Both the position numbers and the translations under genes were made by a program. This document shows, piece by piece, positions 2,358 to 17,542 of a stretch of DNA of 64,000 bases (within the stretch, counting starts at the first letter, position 1; each line of letters begins with the position of its first letter). The notes beneath the pieces were generated by a model. That model had not been told where the DNA came from. It searched no databases and worked only from the letters and a program-made list of their open reading frames with translations. The stretch lies in the IMG/VR virus record IMGVR_UViG_3300042514_000542, positions 62,001 to 126,000 of that record; one strand, given 5' to 3'.

Positions 2358-3085
2358 GCTTCTAGAAAGTTCTTATAACGCTTTGTATCAACCACAAACC
2401 CACTGGAGTCCTTACGACCTTTACCTAGTGCTACAAGTCCTGCAATGGTATTCTTAGGATCAATGAAGCGTAGGTCATGCTTAGTTGCATCAATAACTTT
2501 CTTACCCTTATACTTGGCGGGAAGTCTCTTATCAAAGACTACCGCTACGTTTCCGCCATTACCCAAGACGATATTAACTCGGTCTTGATTATCTTCCTTA
2601 CGAGAAAATGTAAGGTGATAGTTGGATGGGAACTTACCCATAAGAAAGTTCATAACCCTCTTAAGGTTAGGTGTGTAATCATAAAATTGAACCGTAGGAA
2701 AGTGTTCCATGAAGGTCTTACCATCAAGCTTAACAGTCTCCCATGCAACATCAGAAGTAAGGTTAAGACGAAAAGATACTAGCTCACCTTTCTTAGCAGC
2801 AGTATTAACCTTGGCATTAATCTCCTTATAGAGTTGGCGAAGGAATGCTTCACGATTCTCATGGAAGAACCTAGTCTTTTTAATACGAGCTTGTTGAACC
2901 CTTGGATATGCGCCCATTCCAGAACTGAAAAGGCAAGCCTTAATACATCCAGAACTTGCATTAGGACAAATGTTCTTACCACCTAATGTATAAGGTGCAA
3001 GATGCAAGCCAAAAGAAGTCCAACCATATTTTGTATTCTTCTCCAGTTTAGGATTAGATCGTGATAGTAGTTTTTGCGTGGTCAT
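2354..3085 (-). CDS. GP88-family phage protein (Cys-cluster, radical-SAM-like)
   Basis: Motifs CPNASSGCIKAC, RLNLTSD, FYDYT and DLRFIDP match my recollection of the phage Gene product 88 family. Confidence 0.65.
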   Translation of the reverse strand: MTTQKLLSRSNPKLEKNTKYGWTSFGLHLAPYTLGGKNICPNASSGCIKACLFSSGMGAYPRVQQARIKKTRFFHENREAFLRQLYKEINAKVNTAAKKGELVSFRLNLTSDVAWETVKLDGKTFMEHFPTVQFYDYTPNLKRVMNFLMGKFPSNYHLTFSRKEDNQDRVNIVLGNGGNVAVVFDKRLPAKYKGKKVIDATKHDLRFIDPKNTIAGLVALGKGRKDSSGFVVDTKRYKNFLEA

Positions 3086-4217
3086 AGCTAGATTATATTT
3101 CGGTTTTAATTAAGCCCTACAAACCGTAGAGGTAAAATTCTCTGTATCGAACTCAACAGTAATACTTTCACCATAAGTAACCCATGTAGATATAATATCC
3201 ATAATCTCTTCCTTCTTTTCATCAAAGTCGTCGGAAGTTGCAATATCTTCATAATCCAATGCGTCTTTTACAGCATATTCTACTGCATCCGGTGTCTTAA
3301 ATGATACTCTAATCTTCATACCCAAATTGTAGTTCGGTTTTAATTAAGCACCCTTCAGATAAAGAACACCATCATTATCTTCAATAACCATAAATGTTGG
3401 ATCATCGGAATCTTTAGTAGAACCAATCTTCATAAATTCGAAGTTATCAATAGGTATTGGAGTTGATGTAATAGTTGTATATATAATAGTGCCATCAGCA
3501 TCACACATATCCAAAAAATCCAGTAGATTTTTCCAAGTTGTTATATCTAGTTTGTTCATATTATTTTGATTTAAGAAAGAGACATAAAGGTTCAATAACA
3601 CATACTCCCATTTGAGTTGCTACATCCGCTTTATGAAAGAAAGTAGGTGCATCAAAGTCATTCTTATATACAAATGCCGTTGTCACTTCATCCAATCTAA
3701 CAAGAAATTGTGGATGTTCTTTTGTGATATTGTGATTAATTAAGATATCACATAGATGTTCGTATGCCTTATCAGAAGACTTAATTGGGCCTTGGAATAC
3801 AAACCCATGAGTTTCGCTATAATCCTTTTTTAATTCCACAATATCCATATTTCTGTAGGTAATCATATTGTAATTATATTCCGGTTTTAATTATTGTAAA
3901 TTAGGTTTAATATGTTTATTAGATTAAAAAGTTTATTAGAATTAACCAATTCTAGTAGCAGCCGCCTTAATAGATCCCATGGTGCGTCTATACTTACCAA
4001 GTGTATCAAATACTTTATCTTGTTCTTTGGTTAGAAGTTGTGCGATTTCTGTAGCACTTAAAGAAGGAGATCTTGTATGTGATTGAATGATACCACGAAG
4101 CTTAATCATAAGTTCGTGTGTTACAGCATCGCCATGATTTTGAAATAGTGTACCATCATCTGTCTTGTATACTTTTACTTGTTGCATATCTAATTATACT
4201 TCGGTTTTAATTAAAGG

Positions 4218-4902: not shown

Positions 4903-5556
4903 TTAATAACCCCATGCTTTAAGGGTATGTTGGAATGGTTGTGATTCAATTCCTTTAACCAATTCAAGCATTTTGGTGGCGATATCATTGATTTCTTTTT
5001 GTGCGTGTTCGGATTTTCTAAGTTTTAGAAAGTTTGCAAAGCTTCTCATGTTAAAGGAAACGTCTCCTTGAATTTGCGAGTTATACGTCTTAAAGAATCG
5101 TGCTGATTCCTTTGCCCTCTTACGTCCAAGAATAGGCTCTAGGTCTTTGAGGCATTGATGATAGAGTCTATTAGATTCAATAGAAAAATCGTTCAATCTT
5201 TCAAGCCAAGTCATGTTTGGTGTCTCCCCATGAATATGGGAAATCTCTACATCCCAATCTTCTGGAAGATAATACTTATCCTCTTTAAGTTCTTTATACC
5301 TAGCAGACTCCGCATTCATGCTAGAGATACGATGCTTAAGTAAATGAATGTGACTGGCAATATCTGTATCTACTAGGAAGTGAACCATTCCTTTTTCGAA
5401 TGGTGTCTCATGCCCATTCTCCCATAACATCTTAATCAAATTGGGAACACGATTCTTCTTATCTTCGGTTAGTTCTCTTGAAGTGCTAGTCCATGCTGAA
5501 CATGCTATAACTTCGTCTGATCCATAGAATCCGATTAGTTCTACTTTATTATCCAT
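4903..5556 (-). CDS. thyX: flavin-dependent thymidylate synthase
   Basis: GHETPFE, HLLKHRISSMNAESARY, NMRSFANFLKLR..HAQKEI. Confidence 0.9.
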   Translation of the reverse strand: MDNKVELIGFYGSDEVIACSAWTSTSRELTEDKKNRVPNLIKMLWENGHETPFEKGMVHFLVDTDIASHIHLLKHRISSMNAESARYKELKEDKYYLPEDWDVEISHIHGETPNMTWLERLNDFSIESNRLYHQCLKDLEPILGRKRAKESARFFKTYNSQIQGDVSFNMRSFANFLKLRKSEHAQKEINDIATKMLELVKGIESQPFQHTLKAWGY

Positions 5557-6568: not shown

Positions 6569-6659
6569 AGTTGAATTATAGTTCGGTTTTAATTAAGCAG
6601 ATTACGTTTTCGGTCTATGTTGAATACAGAGTTTATTATTTGCTGAGTGTAATCTTATC

Positions 6660-6785
6660 AAATCACATTTTTTGCTACGTGTCCTAGCCATTAGACGATA
6701 CCATCTTATATAGAATGCGATGGCAGCAGGATTCGAACCTACATCACGATCTTAACAGGATATGCATTATTTGCTGTTGTGATTT
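6660..6785 (-). ncRNA. array unit carrying a circularly permuted tRNA-Asn(GTT)-like module
   Basis: Order: ATC-CTGTTAA-GATCG anticodon arm, TGAT, T arm GTAGG-TTCGAAT-CCTGC, acceptor 3' TGCCATC-G, linker, acceptor 5' GATGGTA, D arm GTCT-AATGGCTA-GGAC. Confidence 0.7.
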
Positions 6786-7059
6786 TATTCAAGAGTCTAT
6801 TTCACTTTGCGGCAGACACATTATAAGTCTTCCTAAGAAGATTGTTATCGTTCGTCCCGTATCTGTTACATATCTATTACTAGACTTAGTTCCACTATCT
6901 ACCATCGCCGTATCGGTTTCCCGACTCTAACTACCTTAGTGCCGTTATTCAGTTCTCTATATGCTGTTAGACTCTTTTTATCAGATTTATTATTGTGGCA
7001 TCGAATCCACTAATGCTTACGCATATTATCCTTGTTGGTTTGCTGTAATAAATCTTTTC

Positions 7060-7200
7060 AAAATGCCATTGTTGTTTGGACTCCAGCGTTTACCAATTCC
7101 GCCATACCTCACATTATTAATAACTGTGGAGGCAGTAGGACTTGAACCTACAAGATTTTCATCGGGAGTTTTGCTTCCTTTTATTTGCTGTTAGCATTTT
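7060..7200 (-). ncRNA. array unit carrying a circularly permuted tRNA-Leu-like module (long variable arm, no intact anticodon loop)
   Basis: ACTCC, variable arm GAT-GAAA-ATC, T arm GTAGG-TTCAAGT-CCTAC, TGCCTC, loop, GAGGTA, D arm GCG-GAATTGGTAAA-CGC, GGAGT. Confidence 0.7.
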
Positions 7201-7206
7201 TATTAC

Positions 7207-7296
7207 AAATTCTGGCTATTCCTAGCTTATTTCCCTTGTTTATGTAGAGCGGGAAATATAAGAGTCGAACTTATTAGTAAGATGCGGACAGAATTT
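7207..7296 (-). ncRNA. array unit: minimal permuted tRNA mimic
   Basis: T arm ATAAG-TTCGACT-CTTAT, acceptor ATTTCCC/GGGAAAT closed by a loop, short D hairpin GCTA-GGAA-TAGC, closing stem AAATTCTG/CAGAATTT. Confidence 0.65.
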
Positions 7297-7957
7297 TATC
7301 AGAACATGTTTTTGGGAAACCGTTCCCTATTAAGGCGGGAGTCGAACCCTAGCCCCACTTAGTTTTGGTAGTGATTTATTATTTGCTGTTAATGTTCTTA
7401 TTCAGAAAAAGTGAAGATTAACTCCTATCTTAAGCTCCATATCACAACCTCTGATATGGTGAGGATACCCGCACGACTTTCATCGTTTTGCATATTTGCT
7501 TTTATTTTTGTTTTAGTTGCTGATACTTTTTCTTATACGATTGACGGATATGGAATCGAACCATTTTAGTTCCCTCGGGCCACCGACAGGTTATTTGATA
7601 TAATAATTGTTTTAGTTGCTGAAGTCAATCTATCAGAGGACGTTTTTATTTCAATTAACGTTTGATTTTATATATTTGCTGAATGTCCTCTTGTTATGGG
7701 ATTTCCGATTCGTCACCCACTATTCAGCCTTTTATATCTTTCGACACCGCTTGACTGAATCACTTATTGATCGTCTTAAATTTCGGATTACGTTTATTTT
7801 CAATAACAATGAATTTGGTTATTTGCTGATTGTAATCCTATATCAGATCGCGTTTTTTATTTCCAATAATAAGTTAATATTTGCTGAATACGATCTTGTT
7901 GATAGTTTTTATTATTTCGAACCGTAGAACTACCAAACTACTGAGATTCTTTTATGT

Positions 7958-7998
7958 CCTCTACTCATGTATTTAAACATAGAGTAGAGGTTTGTCAA
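7958..7998 (-). promoter_or_regulatory. candidate promoter of the RNA array inside an inverted repeat
   Basis: TTGACA (7993-7998), 17 nt, then TAAATA (7970-7975). The TAAATA is flanked by the perfect IR CCTCTACTC/GAGTAGAGG (7958-7966, 7982-7990). Confidence 0.5.
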
Positions 7999-8007
7999 CC
8001 ACGACAA

Positions 8008-9666
8008 TTAGATTTCAACCATATTGAGGATTTCTTGGTCTAGGGCAATGTTGATAAGATCATAAGTAGTCTTAATCTTACCACTTAGGAAGCTTACAGC
8101 ACTGGCTGAATATCCGCCCATATAATATACGTTCTGAACATCTTTACCAGTCTCAAACTTCTCACCAGTTCCTCGACCATATGCATTACTTTGAAGGTTC
8201 CAGAGAACAATCACAAAGTTATCTACATAAGCCTTGGAGAATCCAGCATTACGAAGTGTGTCTAGTGCCGCTTCAACATTAGTTCTACCTAGTGATGCTG
8301 GATTAAACTCTGAATCGGACACTGCTAGAATTCCACTAGGAAAATCTGATTCAGGTGTTCCCTCTCTCTTCATCTTAGCGAAAAGATTAATAACACTTTG
8401 GAAGTTAGTTCCACCATAAAAAGAAGACTTATCATTCTTCCACTTATCGACAGGTGTTTGACCAACCCATTTCCTAAGTTTAGCATCGGAATTGAATTCA
8501 ATCCAATGACCTGCAAAGGTTCCTTGTAGGAATTCACTGAAATATAGTGCTAGAGCTTTACCGACATTATAACAACTTGATTTAGTTCCCGGACATTGTG
8601 AAGACATGCTGCCGCTTACGTCTCTTACCACGATAAGATCAGTAACTTCGTTATCTCTTGCCTTTTGGACAAGTGTATCGAATTGCTTATTGATAGTTGC
8701 TTCCTTGTTCTTAACACCCATCCAAGAACCTTCAAAGAGTTCATGAACAAATCCAGTATACTTAACGTCCTTGGTTTCGGGTGCAGTAATCCATGCGGAA
8801 TACTTGTCACTAAGACCATGATTCTTAAGGAACTTGGACTTAACAAGAATCGACAATGCACGACCATGAATCTTATCAAACTCAAGTTCATTGAACTTAG
8901 CCTTAGAGATTAGCTTTTGCCAATCATGTGCGGTTCCACTGTTCTTAAGCTTACGATATTGCTTATAGGTAGAAGGGGTTTCCTTTTGTCCAAAGATCAA
9001 TGAGCAGATCCACTTAGCGATTGCATTGTTGGATTGTGCATCAATGGTAGTAGCTTGGCTACGTGCTTTGATTTGTGGGAGATACTTCTTCACAAGATCA
9101 CAAGTATTCTTGTTATGAAGTCCTGCAAGAATCAATTGACCAAACTTATCCCAATCAAGCTTACGGTTATTCCAACCATTATAGCTAAGGTCATATTGAA
9201 GCATGGTGAATACATCGTGCCACGATCCAAGAGATACAAACAATAGGATGTTATTCCAGAATGCTTGTGGAGACTTGTCATGTAGCCAAATCATACGCAT
9301 AATTGCTTCATGCTTAAGTTCAGTTCCCTTTTGAGGGGATTCAGTCTTAGTTCCATCAGGAAGATTAACCGTGCGAGGAATGGTTCTCATAAACAAGGCA
9401 AACTTAGTAGCCTTAAGAGGATCTTCACCCCACAACATTTCACAATCTTGTGCGATTTCAGAATACTTACGAGGAACTTTATACTTACCTGCTTTGGTGA
9501 ACTGGTCAGTTAGGGAATCACCAGAACTTGAAAATTTCTTAGCACCGTTACCTGAACGGGTTACATTTGATTGAGCCTTTGCATTATTTAGGAATGCATT
9601 AACTTCTCCACGGGTGACAGCTTTCTTAGTAGCTACGACTTCTGGTTTGCGTTTGTTTTCGAACAT
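8008..9666 (-). CDS. Ro60/TROVE-related helical-repeat plus vWA protein (DUF2828-like)
   Basis: N-terminal helical region (DPLKATKFALFMRTIPR, GSWHDV, KKYLP); C-terminal vWA with MIDAS VVRDVSGSM, GGTNFQSV, AVSDSEFN, VLWNL, GYSAS. Confidence 0.8.
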   Translation of the reverse strand: MFENKRKPEVVATKKAVTRGEVNAFLNNAKAQSNVTRSGNGAKKFSSSGDSLTDQFTKAGKYKVPRKYSEIAQDCEMLWGEDPLKATKFALFMRTIPRTVNLPDGTKTESPQKGTELKHEAIMRMIWLHDKSPQAFWNNILLFVSLGSWHDVFTMLQYDLSYNGWNNRKLDWDKFGQLILAGLHNKNTCDLVKKYLPQIKARSQATTIDAQSNNAIAKWICSLIFGQKETPSTYKQYRKLKNSGTAHDWQKLISKAKFNELEFDKIHGRALSILVKSKFLKNHGLSDKYSAWITAPETKDVKYTGFVHELFEGSWMGVKNKEATINKQFDTLVQKARDNEVTDLIVVRDVSGSMSSQCPGTKSSCYNVGKALALYFSEFLQGTFAGHWIEFNSDAKLRKWVGQTPVDKWKNDKSSFYGGTNFQSVINLFAKMKREGTPESDFPSGILAVSDSEFNPASLGRTNVEAALDTLRNAGFSKAYVDNFVIVLWNLQSNAYGRGTGEKFETGKDVQNVYYMGGYSASAVSFLSGKIKTTYDLINIALDQEILNMVEI

Positions 9667-9696: not shown

Positions 9697-9724
9697 AATT
9701 TACTCTATCTTTTTGGTTTGTCAA
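9697..9724 (-). promoter_or_regulatory. sigma70-like promoter of the Ro-like gene
   Basis: TTGACA-N16-TAAATT upstream of ATG 9666; same spacing as TTGACA-N16-TACAAT before rIIB. Confidence 0.5.
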
Positions 9725-10630: not shown

Positions 10631-11401
10631 TCAAACATCCCACAGTCTAGCAAAGAATTCATCAAGTTCTTCTTTGGTTATCACGACCTTCTTACTAAAG
10701 ATATAATCATTGATATCATTATAGTTAGTTAAGTTGAAGTTTTCACCATTAACATAAGACCACCATGAACCATTCTTTTGTTGATCGGTGCATTCGGTAG
10801 CCCAATTATGTCCAATGTTGTGAAGCATTTCATGTTGATCGGCACGACCTTGACCATGTAGTTCTTTGGGTGAGAAGAATTGATTACAGAACATACTAAG
10901 ACTATTACGTTCCCAATCCTTTACTCTCCATAGGAAGACATTGGCAACATCATCTTTAGGACATTGGAATGCACGGGCATCAAAGATAGCAGGATTTGAA
11001 TCTGCAAAATCCCAAACGTTGAAGAATTGTTGATAATTTTTAATTACCCAATTCTTATTAAAGTATGCTGTCATCATTGCAGCAGTAACACTTTCAATCT
11101 TATTCTGTCTACCACCAAACCATTGTTGTGTTTCAATGGTATCACTATCATCCAATACAAATGTCACTTCATCACTTTGAGCATATAAGGCTTTACATCC
11201 TTGCATTTGTTTTGCTACCTCTTTAGCAGACTCAAACATACAAGTAATAAGTGTTTGATCGAAAGGTCTTTGACAACCCTTTGTGAACTGACTAAAGCAC
11301 TTGCCATCCACTCGTATAACTATAGGAATTTTAGGTAAGAAATAATTCTCACTTATAGATTCATATCGTTTTATTCTATCCCCCAAAGAGTCATTTTTCA
11401 T
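10631..11401 (-). CDS. tRNA(His) guanylyltransferase Thg1-like 3'-5' polymerase
   Basis: IVIRVDGKCFSQFT, YAQSDEVTF, FDARAF, WR..DW.RNS. Confidence 0.9.
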   Translation of the reverse strand: MKNDSLGDRIKRYESISENYFLPKIPIVIRVDGKCFSQFTKGCQRPFDQTLITCMFESAKEVAKQMQGCKALYAQSDEVTFVLDDSDTIETQQWFGGRQNKIESVTAAMMTAYFNKNWVIKNYQQFFNVWDFADSNPAIFDARAFQCPKDDVANVFLWRVKDWERNSLSMFCNQFFSPKELHGQGRADQHEMLHNIGHNWATECTDQQKNGSWWSYVNGENFNLTNYNDINDYIFSKKVVITKEELDEFFARLWDV

Positions 11402-12314
11402 AATTCCATTTATATCCTTTATGTGTTTGTCTTTTCCCTTTACAACAAGCTACGATAGCTGATGGATCAAATCCAGTCGATTTGATGCTATCCCATGTTT
11501 TAATATGGTTATCATTTAAATCCTTTTGTTCAACTCTTATCCTGTTGTTTACGGGTGTGAAATTTATATTATTATTCTTAAAGTAGTTTTTGATGCATTT
11601 TATAGGAACACCATATTTTTTGTAAAGCCTGTATATTGTATACTCTTCCGTTTTGAAATCTTTAACTATATCTAAATATTTTAAACTATGATCAATTGGT
11701 CCATCTTCATCAATTTTAGAATTTTTTAATTGTTTTATCTCCCACTTATGTTTGTATGATTCTACTGGACAGTCACCAATATAATTTAAAAAATGTTTAG
11801 CAAATATTCGTTTGATATATATTCTGTTATTGGTGAAGTTGATCCATGATTTCCATTCCTGTAATTGCCCATTTAGAAACTCTAAACTATCTTTATCGAA
11901 GGAATCTGTGCATAATTTAATATATCCATGACTCTTATCTAATGAACCATCACCAACATACCATAACAGAATTATAGTGTTTGTCAACTCTAAATCTTTC
12001 GGAACTATTTTAAGTCCTTCTGGATACCACACCATTCTAAGGTTGTAGAATGTTATGCTGCTCTTAGTTCTTATGCTATAATTTATATATGTCTTCTTTG
12101 TTCTCTTATCGTAAATTTCTCTTCTGATCGGACCATCTTTATATCTGGGAGATACCAAGTCTTTAAGTTGATTCCATACATACTCCACATGATCTAAATT
12201 ACTACTACCATACATGAAGCAAGAGCTTTTACCCTTTATAGATAAGCACCCATCACCTAATAAGCATCCTTGAATTACTTCTAATTCGTATTGTGTTAAA
12301 TTTATTACACTCAT
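11391..12314 (-). CDS. LAGLIDADG homing endonuclease with C-terminal NUMOD1-like tail
   Basis: IQGCLLGDGCL and WYVGDGS motifs; IVACCKGKRQTHKGYKW tail; start reassigned to ATG 12314, after ACTAAATAATAGT. Confidence 0.85.
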   Translation of the reverse strand: MSVINLTQYELEVIQGCLLGDGCLSIKGKSSCFMYGSSNLDHVEYVWNQLKDLVSPRYKDGPIRREIYDKRTKKTYINYSIRTKSSITFYNLRMVWYPEGLKIVPKDLELTNTIILLWYVGDGSLDKSHGYIKLCTDSFDKDSLEFLNGQLQEWKSWINFTNNRIYIKRIFAKHFLNYIGDCPVESYKHKWEIKQLKNSKIDEDGPIDHSLKYLDIVKDFKTEEYTIYRLYKKYGVPIKCIKNYFKNNNINFTPVNNRIRVEQKDLNDNHIKTWDSIKSTGFDPSAIVACCKGKRQTHKGYKWNYEK

Positions 12315-12425
12315 ACTATTATTTAGTGTAGAGTGTAACACTTTTCACATTTGGACATAAGAAAGTTCCAGATATAAGAACGGGTCTGGACTCCGCATGA
12401 AAAAGACTCTTACTGTCTATGTGAA

Positions 12426-13793: not shown

Positions 13794-15293
13794 TTAGAAG
13801 TGTTTTGCTACCCTCTCACGAATCTCTGCAAGCGTCCATTCTCGAATAATTTTCCCGTTGTTGAAGACTTCAACAAATTCACAATTAAGAACATCATCCC
13901 AAGTTGCCTGATCCTTTAGGTAAAATTCACCTTCAAGATCTTTATAGACTGCGAGCAATCCTTTAGCCGATTTCTTCATACCACTAGTATCAGTTTTAGG
14001 ATCTTTGTAAATTTCCACCAATTCTCCATTCTTAACACAAGCTGTAGCTTTACAAGCCCACCCATCAGTATCTCTTGTAACCATTTGATATGTAAAACTT
14101 CCGATACCCAAAACAAGATTAGTAGATGCGAAACCCTTAGCTTTAAGACCCTCGCAGATTCTTTCTGCTACCTCTAAAGTCACTCCATCACCAAGGATAG
14201 CACCAACCTTTTCGTGTAGGACTTTATAACCCTTATCATTAACAGTTCCCCCAAAAATATCCCATAGAAGTTCAACAGTTCCCAATCTTTCGGGACTACC
14301 TTCTGGAGCATCAGGATCACCAATGATAATTAGAACATTATCACCACTATCAGGTCTAAATACCGTTTTATTAACGAAGTGTCCTTCACGGGAAAGGATA
14401 GCCCTTTGCACATCTTCCTCTCTAAGAGTTACGTTTAGGAAAGACCAATAATCGTAGGTGTCAGAAACTAAGCTAACAATACCATAAGGTTGAACTTCAG
14501 TGATGATGTGAAGCATCATTTCCTTCTCGCTTTTATCTCCCCACGAAGAAACCACGCTATGCTCAGTTGCGCTCACACTACATCCGACTAATTCTTCATC
14601 CGAATTAGCATTGTAATACTCTTCGGCAAAGTCTACACCCCAAACAGTATCAGTTCCTACGAAGCTAGTTAAATGCCCCATATCTACTAATGCAGCAGCC
14701 TCGGTTCCCATACAACCACGGGCAGAAAAATTATGACCCTGAAAAGGAACAAATGTTTCGTCACCAGTTTCCTTAGCATATTTTTCAAGCAAGAGTCTAA
14801 ACTGATTTGCGGTAGTCGCAGAAGTAGATAAAGGCCAATAATTAGCACTAATAATAGTTTCAAGATAATTAGTTACCCAAAAGAAGTTTTCATCATTAGG
14901 TTTAGTATTCCAATATTGAAATGTCGGAACCTTATATGGAACCTTACTACCTTCAGGGAGAGCATATACTTGGATAGGTAGATACCCTAGATCATGTAAT
15001 GCTTCCATGTGCTTAGTTCCTACAACATTCTTCTCTCCCAAGTAGTTATTAACCCTTCTAGTAAAGCGTTTAATTACCTTTTCCTTTGGTTGATCAAAAA
15101 ATCCATTCCATTGGTTGATGAAAATCTCTTTAATAACATACTGCATACCTAGTGCAACTACATGTTTCGGAATGTTTTTTCGATAGGATTTTCTAGGAGT
15201 TCCATTACTCACTACTTGTTCGGTATCTGGGTGATAAGCGTTCTTATGGAACATTTTATACCCATCAATTTGTGTTTCAGCGTTGTTTTGCAT
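13794..15293 (-). CDS. nadV: nicotinamide phosphoribosyltransferase-like (Nampt/Namat family)
   Basis: IDGYKMFH, YLETI, HNFSARG, HLTSFVGTDT, ATEHSV, SLVSDTYD, RPDSGD, ILGDGVT, KDPKTD..KKSAKG. Confidence 0.9.
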   Translation of the reverse strand: MQNNAETQIDGYKMFHKNAYHPDTEQVVSNGTPRKSYRKNIPKHVVALGMQYVIKEIFINQWNGFFDQPKEKVIKRFTRRVNNYLGEKNVVGTKHMEALHDLGYLPIQVYALPEGSKVPYKVPTFQYWNTKPNDENFFWVTNYLETIISANYWPLSTSATTANQFRLLLEKYAKETGDETFVPFQGHNFSARGCMGTEAAALVDMGHLTSFVGTDTVWGVDFAEEYYNANSDEELVGCSVSATEHSVVSSWGDKSEKEMMLHIITEVQPYGIVSLVSDTYDYWSFLNVTLREEDVQRAILSREGHFVNKTVFRPDSGDNVLIIIGDPDAPEGSPERLGTVELLWDIFGGTVNDKGYKVLHEKVGAILGDGVTLEVAERICEGLKAKGFASTNLVLGIGSFTYQMVTRDTDGWACKATACVKNGELVEIYKDPKTDTSGMKKSAKGLLAVYKDLEGEFYLKDQATWDDVLNCEFVEVFNNGKIIREWTLAEIRERVAKHF

Positions 15294-16621: not shown

Positions 16622-17542
16622 TCATAGCTCAATTTTCATGCACACAACTCTCTCATCATGTGGATAGAAGTATTTGGTAGTCCAATTTTGTTTGGAATTT
16701 GTGGTATAAACCTTATCAAAATGCTCAGATACGTTTTTGATGCCATCATAGCAATCAGAGTGTGTGGTGAATAACATAAGCTTGCCACAATTCTTTTCAC
16801 GAAGTTTCTTACCAAGGCCAATGAATGTTCCACCCATCGAATTAATATCATCGCAGATAAGTGTAGGATGACCACCTAGATCATCAGCACCTACGAAGAA
16901 CTCCTTAATAGAACCATCCTTGACATCACGAACTTTCTCACAACGAATTAGGTTGAATGTCTTAGCGTGATACATGCAAGCAAGGTATTGTGTAATCTTA
17001 CCTACGCGCTTTCCAGCACCAGCATCAGGACATACGATATTCCATTCCTTTTGGTTGACATCGCTTTGAATGATTTGATCAATATATTTCAATTCATCAA
17101 GAACAATAACATTGTTAAGCAATGCTGGAGTCACTTCACTATGAGGACAAAGGATAGTAACACTGTTGAATCCACAACCATTAATCATATCAGTAAAGAC
17201 CTTAATGGTTAATGGTTCACCTTCATTACATACGCGGTCTTGACGAGCGGCGGGAAAGTATGGAAGAATAAGTCTAATGTCATTAAAACCCATACGACGA
17301 GCAGCATCATTTGCCAGAATAATATCAAACAAATCGCCAATCTTATTATATCGTTGAGTGATTACCAGAGTAGATGCTTCTGGACATGCACATTTGTTAG
17401 TAATCTGAAAGTGCGGCTCCCCGCCTTTGAAGTCAAATTTCTTATAGAATACCTCAACACCCTCGAAAGGTGCGAAGGTTTCATCTAGGTTTAAAACGTA
17501 TGGTCGTTCTGCTTTCATGTTCCAATGTATATGCTGCTTCAT
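16622..17542 (-). CDS. prs: ribose-phosphate pyrophosphokinase-like (Prs/Adps family)
   Basis: FKGGEPH, LPYFPAARQDR, CPHS, VCPDAGA, CEKVRD, ICDDINSMGGTF. Confidence 0.9.
   Translation of the reverse strand: MKQHIHWNMKAERPYVLNLDETFAPFEGVEVFYKKFDFKGGEPHFQITNKCACPEASTLVITQRYNKIGDLFDIILANDAARRMGFNDIRLILPYFPAARQDRVCNEGEPLTIKVFTDMINGCGFNSVTILCPHSEVTPALLNNVIVLDELKYIDQIIQSDVNQKEWNIVCPDAGAGKRVGKITQYLACMYHAKTFNLIRCEKVRDVKDGSIKEFFVGADDLGGHPTLICDDINSMGGTFIGLGKKLREKNCGKLMLFTTHSDCYDGIKNVSEHFDKVYTTNSKQNWTTKYFYPHDERVVCMKIEL

What the first reader, a model, noticed from the sequence alone, without database searches (positions are those of the whole stretch)
6599..9666. Ro60-like protein gene followed by an array of 12 Y-RNA-like modules with a constant handle and variable payloads
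Seen in sequence: directly downstream of the TROVE-like/vWA gene, on the same strand, 12 back-to-back units are each closed by a different 7-10 bp stem (e.g. AGATTAC/GTAATCT, AGAGGAC/GTCCTCT, GGATTAC/GTAATCC, AGAACAT/ATGTTCT). The stem sequences differ while pairing is kept. In 11 units (A/T)CAGCA follows the 5' strand at near-fixed spacing. Payloads range from ~30-nt A-rich loops to ~160-nt folded domains, several tRNA-like. Established: bacterial Ro60 (Rsr) binds Y RNAs through a terminal stem, and YrlA RNAs carry a permuted tRNA-like domain. Inference: one ring protein loads about a dozen different adaptor RNAs, an RNA-programmed RNP repertoire that could act as decoys for host tRNA nucleases/ligases or tether RNA-processing enzymes. 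I do not recognise the CAGCAA handle as the known Y-RNA motif, so it may be an undescribed family.
Basis: partly seen in the sequence, partly recalled or inferred. Interest (0 to 1): 0.95.

Follow-up and report, generated by a model that had tools for sequence, protein, structure and literature searches.

The report
Phage Ro60-like gene with RNA array
A jumbo phage carries a gene for a Ro60-like ring protein followed by about thirteen small RNA genes that share one constant handle and display different tRNA look-alike pieces. The same gene-plus-RNA pair recurs in many phage groups, and the handle closely resembles that of the unexplained Class I RNAs of social amoebae.

Summary
On the minus strand, a 552-aa gene (8008-9666) is followed by 13 back-to-back modules (7897-6599). 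Eleven have a 7-10 bp closing stem of varying sequence, then (A/U)CAGCA(A/U), a variable payload and a GAUA spacer.

The protein is a DUF7788/DUF2828 member. Its predicted fold matches Ro60 best, and the MIDAS site is conserved.

The pairing recurs widely:
- 79 related viral loci carry 360 units on the gene's strand and 60 on the other.
- Felix O1-like, Listeria, Enterococcus, Klebsiella and mycobacterial phages at about 25% protein identity carry the same units.
- No neighbouring protein gene is conserved.

Payloads imitate tRNA parts:
- anticodon stem-loops (63 of 175 short units, against 5 in shuffles);
- YrlA-like T-arm/acceptor/D-arm cores;
- occasionally a whole tRNA.

No Rfam family reaches its threshold. 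The nearest are YrlA, which matches the tRNA-like core only, and Dictyostelium Class I RNA, which shares the AAG start, the stem, UUACAGCAA and the CUG end.

My best reading is a Ro60-type RNP whose handle binds the protein and whose payloads bait tRNA-directed enzymes. Expression and binding are untested. I could not check whether Dictyostelium has the protein partner.

The parts
8008..9666 (-). Ro60-like protein gene (552 aa): N-terminal helical repeats plus C-terminal vWA/DUF7788 domain. MIDAS residues D349, S351, S353, T420 and D451.
   Evidence: ORF. Pfam DUF7788 at 1.4e-10. phrog_850 'RNA-binding protein' at 9e-32. AF2 model pLDDT 84.8. Foldseek top hits are Ro60 9nfa_A and phage phiLo Ro60 9l5y_B. 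Invariant columns.
9697..9724 (-). Promoter-like site (TTGACA-16-TAAATT) upstream of the gene.
   Evidence: Consensus scan only. The number of such sites in the region is not above shuffles.
7898..8007 (-). Leader between the stop codon and the first unit. It holds a 9-bp hairpin (7990-7958) and a partial tRNA-like piece.
   Evidence: Fold of -28.5 kcal/mol, z = -3.9.
7845..7896 (-). Unit 1: short, with handle UUCAGCAA.
   Evidence: (45.9 bits). RF01414 at 30.9 bits.
7785..7838 (-). Unit 2: short. The payload hairpin has a 7-nt loop UUGUUAU, which is Asn-like (GUU).
   Evidence: 42.8 bits; sequence read.
7693..7784 (-). Module 3: no CAGCA handle (UUCAGUCAA instead) and two internal hairpins.
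7635..7691 (-). Unit 4: short. The payload hairpin has the loop ACGUUAA, which is Asn-like (GUU).
   Evidence: 60.2 bits; RF01414, 30.7 bits.
7539..7630 (-). Unit 5: stem GAUUGAC/GUCAAUC, payload with a T-arm-like hairpin.
7404..7533 (-). Unit 6: 9-bp stem and a structured 110-nt payload. It is 87% identical in the nearest relative, L004.
7301..7398 (-). Unit 7: payload with a T-arm (GGGUUCGACUCCC) and a further hairpin.
   Evidence: (34.2 bits).
7207..7296 (-). Module 8: 8-bp closing stem but no CAGCA handle.
7060..7200 (-). Unit 9: T arm, acceptor-like hairpin and D arm (YrlA-like order).
   Evidence: Weak tRNA hit at 7127-7178.
6983..7055 (-). Unit 10: 10-bp stem, GNRA hairpin and a T-arm-like hairpin.
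   Evidence: (30.6 bits).
6791..6976 (-). Unit 11: handle ACAGCAU and a 160-nt structured payload.
6660..6785 (-). Unit 12: permuted tRNA-like payload in the order T arm, 7-bp acceptor-like hairpin, D arm.
6599..6655 (-). Unit 13: short and last in the array. The payload hairpin has the 7-nt loop AUUCAAC.
   Evidence: (43.2 bits).

Best explanation
The gene and the array form one module, a phage Ro60-type ribonucleoprotein system.

Proposed mechanism (all inferred):
1. The array is transcribed on the gene's strand as part of a small-RNA/tRNA operon. It is then cut in the 4-nt GAUA spacers into RNAs of about 50-190 nt.
2. Each RNA carries the same handle: A-A-G/A at the 5' end, a 7-bp terminal stem, single-stranded (A/U)CAGCAA next to the 5' strand, an A-rich run before the 3' strand, and a C/U-U-G end. 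The ring-shaped Ro60-like protein binds this handle.
3. The variable payload sticks out and imitates a part of tRNA. It may be an anticodon stem-loop (often Lys-UUU-like; Asn-GUU-like in this window), a T-arm/acceptor/D-arm core as in YrlA, or a whole tRNA.
4. The RNPs act as baits for tRNA-directed enzymes during infection. Most likely they soak up host anticodon nucleases or other tRNA-targeting defence factors. Recruiting tRNA end-healing or repair enzymes is a close second.

What is shown: the anatomy, the stem covariation, the co-occurrence with the gene, the Ro60-like fold and the tRNA-part mimicry.
What is inferred: transcription and processing, protein binding to the handle, and the bait function.
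For: Protein:
- Predicted fold is closest to Ro60 and to phage phiLo Ro60 over the full length, and the MIDAS site is invariant.
- Relatives are annotated 'Ro-like RNA binding protein' or 'TROVE domain containing protein'.

Gene-RNA association:
- 79 loci carry 360 units on the gene's strand and 60 on the other, and the units cluster next to the gene.
- No other protein family is shared by more than 11 of 78 loci.
- The same units sit next to homologues of about 25% identity in Felix O1-like, Listeria, Enterococcus, Klebsiella and mycobacterial phages.
- In the reverse search from the RNA pattern, 12 of 17 true arrays hold the gene on the same strand. A 13th has it just outside the fetched piece.

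Stem covariation:
- Defined from anchors alone, 36% of neighbouring units pair perfectly at 7 of 7 positions, against 1% with shuffled partners. These comprise 72 distinct stems.
- 138 cells have changes on both sides, against 48.5 in shuffles.

Payload mimicry:
- Anticodon-loop-like hairpins occur in 63 of 175 short units, against 5.0 +/- 2.1 in shuffles.
- A T arm occurs in 75 of 122 long units, and 36 of those have an acceptor-like hairpin directly after it.
- The YrlA model matches these tRNA-like cores.

Context:
- The related loci hold 285 tRNA genes on the gene's strand and none on the other.
- A Thg1-like gene lies two ORFs upstream in the window, and RtcB lies nearby in a Listeria phage.
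- One homologue is fused to a 2H/LigT phosphoesterase.
- In some relatives a handle-like fold covers the gene's own start codon, as expected for an autoregulating RNA-binding protein.
- In the literature, the Felixounavirus Bas63 homologue gp130 is Ro60-like by structure and counters the ppl defence (PMC11482910).
Against: - There are no expression, processing or binding data.
- The Ro60 similarity exists at fold level only (TM about 0.5). There is no TROVE profile hit and no PDB sequence hit.
- The handle is unlike the known Ro60-binding helix of Y RNA/YrlA.
- Three units enclose complete tRNAs. That would also fit a processing or leader-trailer role for the stem.
- A giant-virus-like homologue locus (L207) has no units.
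- No target nuclease is identified. The published anti-defence phenotype concerns ppl, which its authors think acts on DNA.
- The U-rich 'anticodons' could partly reflect base composition, although the shuffles control for it.
Confidence: 0.6

Rival explanations
1. This is the same RNP, but it works as a repair or quality-control scaffold rather than a decoy. As proposed for Ro60/YrlA with RtcB in bacteria, the tRNA-like RNAs would tether the ring protein to end-healing and sealing enzymes (RtcB, 2H/LigT, Thg1-like, PNPase), or gate its access to damaged tRNAs.
For: - One homologue is fused to a 2H/LigT phosphoesterase domain (P0229).
- RtcB lies 1.3 kb downstream in Listeria phage LMTA-57.
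- A Thg1-like gene lies at 10631-11401 in the window.
- Phage phiLo Ro60, its Yrl RNAs and host PNPase form a complex (PMC12135203).
- The jumbo-phage survey places ROT/TROVE proteins among RNA-repair components (PMC7824862).
Against: - Repair genes are not conserved neighbours; no family is found in more than 11 of 78 loci.
- A dozen different payloads, many of them bare anticodon-arm mimics that turn over quickly between close relatives, look more like a bait repertoire than a tether for one enzyme.
Confidence: 0.25
2. The closing stem and CAGCAA are a processing or stability cassette of the phage small-RNA/tRNA operon, recognised by a host RNase or another factor. The neighbouring Ro60-like protein does not bind it.
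For: - The exact 4-nt GAUA spacing between units suggests defined cleavage.
- Three units enclose complete tRNAs, like a leader-trailer clamp.
- The arrays are embedded among tRNA genes.
Against: - The handle follows the protein family across hosts whose RNase sets differ greatly: cyanobacteria, enterobacteria, Firmicutes and mycobacteria.
- Canonical tRNAs in the same operons mostly lack the handle.
- A handle mimic over the protein's own start codon is hard to explain without protein binding.
- In the reverse search the gene is nearly always present.
Confidence: 0.1
3. The region holds decayed tRNA genes, mobile elements with terminal inverted repeats, or small protein genes on the opposite strand. 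It is not a functional RNA family.
For: - Several payloads contain tRNA fragments.
- ORFs of 52-103 aa exist on the plus strand.
- Each unit has terminal inverted repeats.
Against: - The invariant handle, compensatory stem changes and fixed geometry recur across hundreds of units in unrelated phages.
- The inverted repeats differ between units while an internal motif stays constant, which is the reverse of a transposon family.
- There are no long direct repeats.
- The homologous stretch in Lbo-JY46 is left unannotated.
Confidence: 0.03

Closest known systems
Bacterial and phage Ro60 (Rsr) with Y RNAs, especially YrlA/YrlB (Rfam RF02553; Chen et al. 2014, PMC4201824)
   Same: - A ring/vWA protein gene has several small RNA genes beside it on the same strand.
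- The RNA ends pair in a terminal stem.
- One module imitates tRNA in the order T arm, acceptor-like stem-loop, D arm.
   Different: - The protein is DUF2828/DUF7788, with no TROVE profile match.
- The handle is a short variable stem plus single-stranded CAGCAA, not the conserved bulged Ro60-binding helix.
- YrlA scores reach only 21-42 bits against a gathering score of 69, and only on the tRNA-like core.
- Arrays reach about 13 units.
- Many units carry only an anticodon-arm mimic.
Thermus phage phiLo phiRo60 with Yrl1/Yrl2 (PMC12135203; PDB 9L5Y)
   Same: - It is a phage-encoded Ro60 homologue with Y-like RNAs encoded next to it.
- It is the second-best structural match to the model.
   Different: phiLo has two RNAs with a CGAA bulge motif. 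Here the handle is CAGCAA, the arrays are large and the payloads imitate tRNA parts.
Class I RNAs of dictyostelid social amoebae (Rfam RF01414; Kjellin et al. 2021, PMC7919456)
   Same: - Same size, about 55-60 nt.
- AAG start.
- Terminal stem of 6-7 bp with variable, covarying sequence.
- (C)UUACAGCAA directly after the 5' strand.
- A variable middle, an A-rich 3' part, and a CUG(U/A) end.
- RF01414 gives the two best Rfam hits in the whole window.
   Different: - Scores of 31-39 bits stay below the gathering score of 41.5.
- The spacing differs by one nucleotide.
- The amoebal genes are dispersed and have their own DUSE promoters.
- Their known direct binder is an RRM protein (Rnp1A/CIBP).
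- I could not test whether Dictyostelia encode a DUF2828/DUF7788 protein.
Felixounavirus Bas63 gp130 (PhageMaP preprint, PMC11482910)
   Same: It belongs to the same protein family, judging by its Felix O1-like relatives. The preprint reports it as Ro60-like by structure, located directly upstream of the tRNA stretch, and acting as a counter to the ppl defence. The authors guessed that some 'tRNAs' might be Y RNAs.
   Different: No RNA partner was identified there. Here the partner candidates are located in a Felix O1-like genome, for example L002 5726-5802, 5888-5955, 6313-6389 and 6403-6533.

Membership tests
Ro60/TROVE proteins | Sequence match to the TROVE domain or to solved Ro60 chains | tested here: not met
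   Pfam gives only DUF7788. There is no PDB sequence hit with the single sequence or the profile. One distant homologue weakly matches vWA_Ro60, below its cut-off.
Ro60/TROVE proteins | Fold: helical-repeat ring followed by a vWA domain | tested here: met
   AF2 model pLDDT 84.8, pTM 0.82. The two best Foldseek PDB hits are Ro60 (9nfa_A, E=3.4e-5, TM 0.48) and phage Ro60 (9l5y_B, E=4.1e-5, TM 0.46/0.53) over 551-602 columns. The next hits are isolated vWA domains.
Ro60/TROVE proteins | MIDAS motif in the vWA domain | tested here: met
   D349, S351, S353, T420 and D451 are invariant in 20 homologues.
Ro60/TROVE proteins | Binds Y RNA through the terminal stem | not testable with these tools
   There is only indirect support, from co-occurrence and from the operator-like mimic.
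DUF2828/DUF7788 (Pfam PF11443 + PF25043) | C-terminal DUF7788 domain above the gathering score | tested here: met
   41.3 bits against 27.1.
DUF2828/DUF7788 (Pfam PF11443 + PF25043) | N-terminal DUF2828 domain | tested here: inconclusive
   The window protein itself has no hit. Close relatives (P0039, P0067 and others) and all distant phage homologues match it above the cut-off.
YrlA / bacterial Y RNA (RF02553) | Encoded beside the Ro60-type gene, with 5' and 3' ends paired in a terminal stem | tested here: met
YrlA / bacterial Y RNA (RF02553) | tRNA-like domain in the order T arm, acceptor-like stem-loop, D arm | tested here: met
   Window units 9 and 12. 36 long units in relatives. The YrlA model aligns to these cores.
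YrlA / bacterial Y RNA (RF02553) | Conserved Ro60-binding helix and a score at or above the gathering threshold (69 bits) | tested here: not met
   The window has no YrlA hit at E<=10. Relatives score 21-42 bits, and the stem part is unaligned or non-canonical.
Dictyostelium Class I RNA (RF01414) | RNA of 42-65 nt with a short terminal stem joining the 5' and 3' ends | tested here: met
   Short units of 50-62 nt with 7-bp stems. Compare PMC7919456.
Dictyostelium Class I RNA (RF01414) | 11-nt motif CCUUACAGCAA next to the 5' strand | tested here: met
   The window has (A/U)UUCAGCAA or AACAGCAA. Lbo-JY46 has CUUACAGCAA, 10 of 11 positions. 34 of 37 D. discoideum RNAs carry ACAGCAA.
Dictyostelium Class I RNA (RF01414) | Conserved ends: AAG start and CUGU end | tested here: met
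   In the phage logo, A is 97% at position -1 (not imposed by the scanner) and G/A is 76/22% at position 1; the scanner allowed only A or G at position 0. On the 3' side, C/U at -2 is free, while U at -1 and the following G were required by the scanner. The next base, not imposed, is A 63% / U 30%.
Dictyostelium Class I RNA (RF01414) | Rfam gathering score (41.5 bits) | tested here: not met
   30.9 and 30.7 bits in the window. The best relatives score 39.3 and 37.3. None passes in 15 loci.
Dictyostelium Class I RNA (RF01414) | Dispersed genes with a DUSE promoter in a dictyostelid genome | tested here: not met
   Here the units are tandem and lie in phage genomes.
Canonical tRNA genes | Cloverleaf recognised by ARAGORN or by Rfam tRNA at threshold | tested here: not met
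   ARAGORN calls none in the window. The best Rfam tRNA score is 19.6 bits against 29. In relatives, 3 units do enclose a whole tRNA.
CRISPR-like repeat-spacer array | Long identical direct repeats separating the variable spacers | tested here: not met
   Only handle-centred similarities of 16-31 nt at 73-88% identity.

The most novel reading that the evidence does not exclude
The CAGCAA-handle RNAs of phages and the Class I RNAs of dictyostelid amoebae are one RNA family. Class I RNAs have been held to be unique to Dictyostelia and have had no known function since 2004. If they are the same family, Class I RNAs are Y-RNA-like partners of a DUF2828/Ro60-like protein. That protein might be the uncharacterised pull-down protein DDB_G0281243 or another vWA protein. 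The system would have been inherited, or acquired from phage, bacterial or giant-virus sources by these bacterivores. The phage arrays would then be a programmable display of tRNA-part baits on that ancient handle.
Probability: 0.45. Interest if true: 0.9.

Novelty: new variant of a known kind. Interest (0 to 1): 0.82.

Why it matters
- It gives a candidate RNA partner to a very large orphan protein family. DUF2828/DUF7788 has 3500 clusters at 50% identity and occurs in 510 deposited phage genomes. These include model phages related to Felix O1, the Listeria Pecentumvirus group and mycobacteriophages.
- It defines an RNA family that Rfam lacks.
- It suggests that phages field whole repertoires of tRNA-part mimics, including bare anticodon arms, mounted on one protein. 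This bears on the arms race around tRNA-cleaving defence systems and on RNA repair.
- The handle's near-identity to Dictyostelium Class I RNA turns a twenty-year-old open question into a direct test: does a DUF2828/Ro60-like protein bind Class I RNAs?

Tried and rejected
- **Eukaryotic homologues.** The representative-library search returned only the close clade in its top 150. A search with the giant-virus-like homologue L154 returned only unnamed metagenome proteins and one 'TROVE domain containing protein' from a viral metagenome.
- **DDB_G0281243.** It appears in no held text other than the preprint, and in no supplement. Avesson 2011 is not held.
- **Giant-virus link.** L154 has handle-like elements downstream of its gene. 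A second giant-virus-like locus, L207, has none. I left this as a side note.
- **LigT-fusion protein P0229.** Its locus is not on record.
- **Second fold search (viral library).** The model was no longer stored.
- **Conserved protein neighbours.** There are none.
- **Promoter and terminator scans.** Counts are not above shuffles.
- **Reverse DNA pattern search.** The 16-base pattern gave mostly chance matches, 63 of 80 loci. Only loci with at least 3 units were used.


Full report
**1. What is in the window**

The 552-aa ORF at 8008-9666 lies on the minus strand. Read on that strand, the 1.4 kb downstream of it (7897-6599) is a head-to-tail series of modules.

My stem scanner finds 11 units in which CAGCA sits 9-11 nt after the unit start and the two ends form a 7-10 bp stem. 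Two further modules lack the handle: 7784-7693, and 7296-7207, which has an 8-bp closing stem. The count is therefore 13 rather than 12.

- Minimum-free-energy folding recovers the closing stem in all 11 handle units and in 7296-7207, and leaves CAGCAA unpaired in the units shown. Module 7784-7693 has no terminal stem.
- WCAGCAA occurs ten times on the minus strand inside the array. The whole window has 26 matches, against 14.3 +/- 3.7 in shuffles.
- The region has no long direct repeats. Only the handle is shared, so the units are not copies of one another.
- ARAGORN calls no tRNA anywhere in the window.

**2. The protein**

By sequence it matches only Pfam DUF7788, the C-terminal vWA-like part of the old DUF2828 family, and PHROG 850 'RNA-binding protein'. 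Neither the sequence nor a 20-member profile finds any solved structure.

An AlphaFold model built from that alignment is confident (pLDDT 84.8, pTM 0.82). It has about 18 helices followed by an alpha/beta domain. Its two best Foldseek matches in the PDB, both over the whole length, are Ro60 in a Ro60/La/pre-5S complex (E=3.4e-5, TM 0.48) and the Ro60 of Thermus phage phiLo (E=4.1e-5, TM 0.46/0.53). The next hits are isolated vWA domains. The MIDAS residues are invariant.

Distant phage homologues score above threshold for both DUF2828 and DUF7788. They are deposited as 'Ro-like RNA binding protein' in mycobacteriophages.

The family is very large:
- 3500 clusters at 50% identity;
- 510 deposited phage genomes.

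The protein is therefore Ro60-like in fold and in annotation history, but it is not a TROVE-profile member.

**3. The gene and the RNAs travel together**

The window comes from a 206.6-kb IMG/VR contig. I fetched 79 further viral loci encoding relatives at 36-85% identity.

- These loci carry 360 units on the gene's strand and 60 on the other. The units lie mostly directly downstream of the gene, and upstream in some lineages. They are joined by an exact 4-nt GAUA spacer.
- A test free of circularity used only CAGCAA positions and fixed geometry. In it, 102 of 282 neighbouring units pair perfectly at 7 of 7 positions, against 1% with shuffled partners. These 102 comprise 72 distinct stems.
- On an alignment of 55 short units, the seven core pairs show 138 cells changed on both sides, against 48.5 in shuffles and 13-30 when the partner is slid.
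- A covariance model from these units contains no window sequence. It finds six window units and nothing else in 64 kb.
- No neighbouring protein family is shared by more than 11 of 78 loci. By contrast, 285 canonical tRNA genes lie on the gene's strand and none on the other.

The association reaches far beyond this clade. The cyanophage Lbo-JY46 (44% identity) has five units right after its gene. At 23-26% identity, units with the same handle lie next to the gene, on its strand, in all of these phages:
- Felix O1-like UAB_Phi87;
- Listeria phage LMTA-57;
- Enterococcus phage Ben;
- Klebsiella phage KP2025;
- Mycobacterium phage Loadrie.

I also searched IMG/VR from the RNA side with a junction pattern. 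Of 17 genuine arrays, 12 hold the gene on the same strand in the fetched piece. A 13th is the contig of L029, where the gene lies just outside that piece.

**4. Anatomy of the handle**

Across 262 units with standard spacing, the consensus runs as follows:
- A, A, then G (76%) or A;
- five variable paired bases, with a C-G pair favoured at the inner end of the stem;
- two or three bases ending in A (88%);
- CAGCAA, followed by A/U-rich sequence;
- on the 3' side, an A-rich run, the complementary strand ending C/U-U, then G and A/U-rich spacer.

Some of these positions (A or G at the first base, CAGCA, the final U and the following G) were required by the scanner; the A before the unit, the A before CAGCA and the sixth base of CAGCAA were not. 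CAGCAA stays constant in all phage groups except for occasional variants such as CAGCAU and CAGCGA, while the terminal pairs drift. For example, mycobacteriophages have UGG...CCA and Felix O1-like phages have AGACC...GGUCU.

**5. Payloads**

*Short units.* Of 175 distinct short units, 120 hold a hairpin with a stem of at least 4 bp and a 7-nt loop, against 55 +/- 6 in shuffled payloads. In 63, the loop reads pyrimidine-U-NNN-purine-H like an anticodon loop, against 5.0 +/- 2.1 (maximum 15) in shuffles. The commonest loop is CUUUUAA, and it sits on stems of varying sequence. From my own memory, this is the loop of bacterial tRNA-Lys(UUU). UGU, AUG and CUU follow in frequency. In the window, units 2 and 4 show GUU (Asn-like) loops.

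*Long units.* Of 122 long units, 75 contain a T arm. In 36 of these, a 7-bp acceptor-like hairpin starts directly after it, and four have linkers beginning NCC. This is the YrlA order of T arm, acceptor-like stem-loop and D arm described by Chen et al.. Three units enclose a complete tRNA.

*Turnover.* The repertoire changes quickly. Only about five of the 13 window modules have recognisable orthologues in the nearest relative, whose protein is 85% identical.

**6. Comparison with known RNA families**

No Rfam family reaches its gathering score.

*YrlA.* The YrlA model matches only the tRNA-like cores of long units in relatives (21-42 bits against 69). Its Ro60-binding stem does not align with the handle.

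*Dictyostelium Class I RNA.* Unexpectedly, the two best Rfam hits in the whole 64-kb window are to RF01414 (30.9 and 30.7 bits against 41.5). Both lie on array units. Relatives reach 39.3 and 37.3 bits.

Class I RNAs are described as follows (PMC7919456):
- 42-65 nt long;
- starting AAG and ending CUGU;
- with a 6-bp terminal stem of variable, compensating sequence;
- with the motif CCUUACAGCAA beside the 5' strand, and otherwise variable;
- reported as unique to Dictyostelia.

The curated D. discoideum sequences show ACAGCAA in 34 of 37 RNAs, and all begin with G and end in UG. One Lbo-JY46 unit shares the first 18 handle positions with DdR-31 apart from a single extra C.

The published pull-down with DdR-21 gave Rnp1A/CIBP, GuaB, NdkC and the uncharacterised DDB_G0281243. 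I could not obtain any dictyostelid protein to test for a DUF2828/DUF7788 homologue.

**7. How it most likely works**

*Shown:* a conserved gene-RNA module, a Ro60-like fold, a constant handle with a covarying stem, and payloads that imitate tRNA parts.

*Inferred:* the array is transcribed with the gene and tRNA operon and is cut in the GAUA spacers. The ring protein binds the handle. The exposed payloads bait tRNA-directed enzymes.

Three observations support protein binding:
- The pair is maintained across hosts whose RNases differ greatly.
- No other protein is a conserved partner.
- In 9 of 34 relatives the gene's own 5' end reads AAG-AUG-UU(C/U)-(G/A)AC-AGC-AAA. In six of these nine the exact 7-nt complement of AGAUGUU lies 59-71 nt downstream, and others keep a shorter ACAUCU or CAUCU complement. 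This places the start codon inside a handle-like stem, the classic layout of an autoregulatory operator. The window's own gene lacks this mimic.

Between the two functions, I favour sequestration of host tRNA-targeting nucleases. The reasons are that many payloads are bare anticodon arms, the repertoire is large and turns over fast, and the Bas63 homologue is a published counter-defence gene.

A repair-scaffold role is a serious rival. It is supported by a fusion of one homologue to a 2H/LigT phosphoesterase, RtcB near the Listeria phage gene, a Thg1-like gene two ORFs upstream in the window, and the phiLo Ro60-Yrl-PNPase complex.

**8. Novelty and limits**

Ro60-Y RNA systems, including phage ones, are known, so this is a new variant of a known kind. 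Five features are new:
- the DUF2828/DUF7788 protein branch gains an RNA partner;
- the handle is undescribed in phages;
- arrays reach about 13 units;
- payloads include anticodon-arm mimics;
- the handle resembles that of the amoebal Class I RNAs.

I found no paper describing any of these.

Everything here is computational. Transcription, processing, binding and function remain untested. The Ro60 assignment rests on a predicted structure with TM of about 0.5.

Noticed in passing
L008, L010, L011, L016, L027, L029, L032 at about 3999-4070 (also L022 and L037; weaker in L061, L079, L017, L018): The 5' end of the Ro60-like gene itself looks like a handle. It reads AAG-AUG-UUC-GAC-AGC-AAA, and the complement AACAUCUG lies 59-71 nt downstream, so the start codon sits in the 5' strand of the stem. 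This could be an autoregulatory operator. The window's own gene (ATGTTCGAAAAC...) lacks it.
   Followed up: partly
window 10631-11401 (-), 13794-15293 (-), 16622-17542 (-), 11391-12341 (-), 4903-5556 (-): Neighbours on the same strand are a Thg1-like tRNA 5'-end guanylyltransferase-family protein, NAPRTase plus a PRPP-synthetase-like protein (NAD salvage), a LAGLIDADG endonuclease and ThyX. Klebsiella phage KP2025 also has a nicotinamide phosphoribosyltransferase next to its tRNA/DUF2828 region.
   Followed up: partly
P0229 (843 aa, from the representative library): A homologue is fused at its C terminus to a 2'-5' RNA ligase/2H phosphoesterase (LigT-like) domain (86 bits). This links the family to RNA end-healing. 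Its genomic locus was not on record.
   Followed up: partly
L154 6295-7986 and 8190-8420 (IMG/VR contig GVMAG-M-3300013285-6_000001): A contig binned as a giant-virus MAG encodes a DUF2828+DUF7788 protein. Downstream are several elements in which a hairpin is followed directly by AUACAGCAA, plus one mini-unit. Relatives include a 'TROVE domain containing protein' from a viral metagenome. A second giant-virus-like locus (L207, next to a zf-MYND gene) has no units.
   Followed up: partly
L035 6922-7281; L008, L010, L013: A tmRNA gene and many canonical tRNA genes directly flank the arrays in relatives, all on the gene's strand. The 64-kb window itself has no callable tRNA.
   Followed up: partly
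L087 about 2690-2735, 2870-2920, 3030-3075, 3210-3255: In Enterococcus phage Ben, each unit is preceded by a repeated element of about 50 nt (AAAAGGTTTTG...) containing a hairpin. This may be an individual promoter or a processing element.
   Followed up: no
window 7784-7693 and 7296-7207: Two modules in the array lack the CAGCA handle. One has UUCAGUCAA in its place. The other keeps an 8-bp closing stem. They may be decaying units or a different class.
   Followed up: partly
window 7990-7958 (-): A strong 9-bp hairpin lies 18 nt after the stop codon of the gene, overlapped by a TTGACA-17-TAAATA promoter-like string (7998-7970). It could be a processing site, an attenuator or the array's own promoter.
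   Followed up: no
L086 3357-3788: The deposited annotation of Klebsiella phage KP2025 has a 432-nt 'tRNA-Arg' that runs into the start of the DUF2828 gene. It is probably an annotation artefact or an interrupted tRNA.
   Followed up: no
window array against L004, L005 and L006: Repertoire turnover is fast. Units 2, 5, 6, 9 and 11 have orthologues in the closest relative (72-87% identity), while most other units have none.
   Followed up: yes
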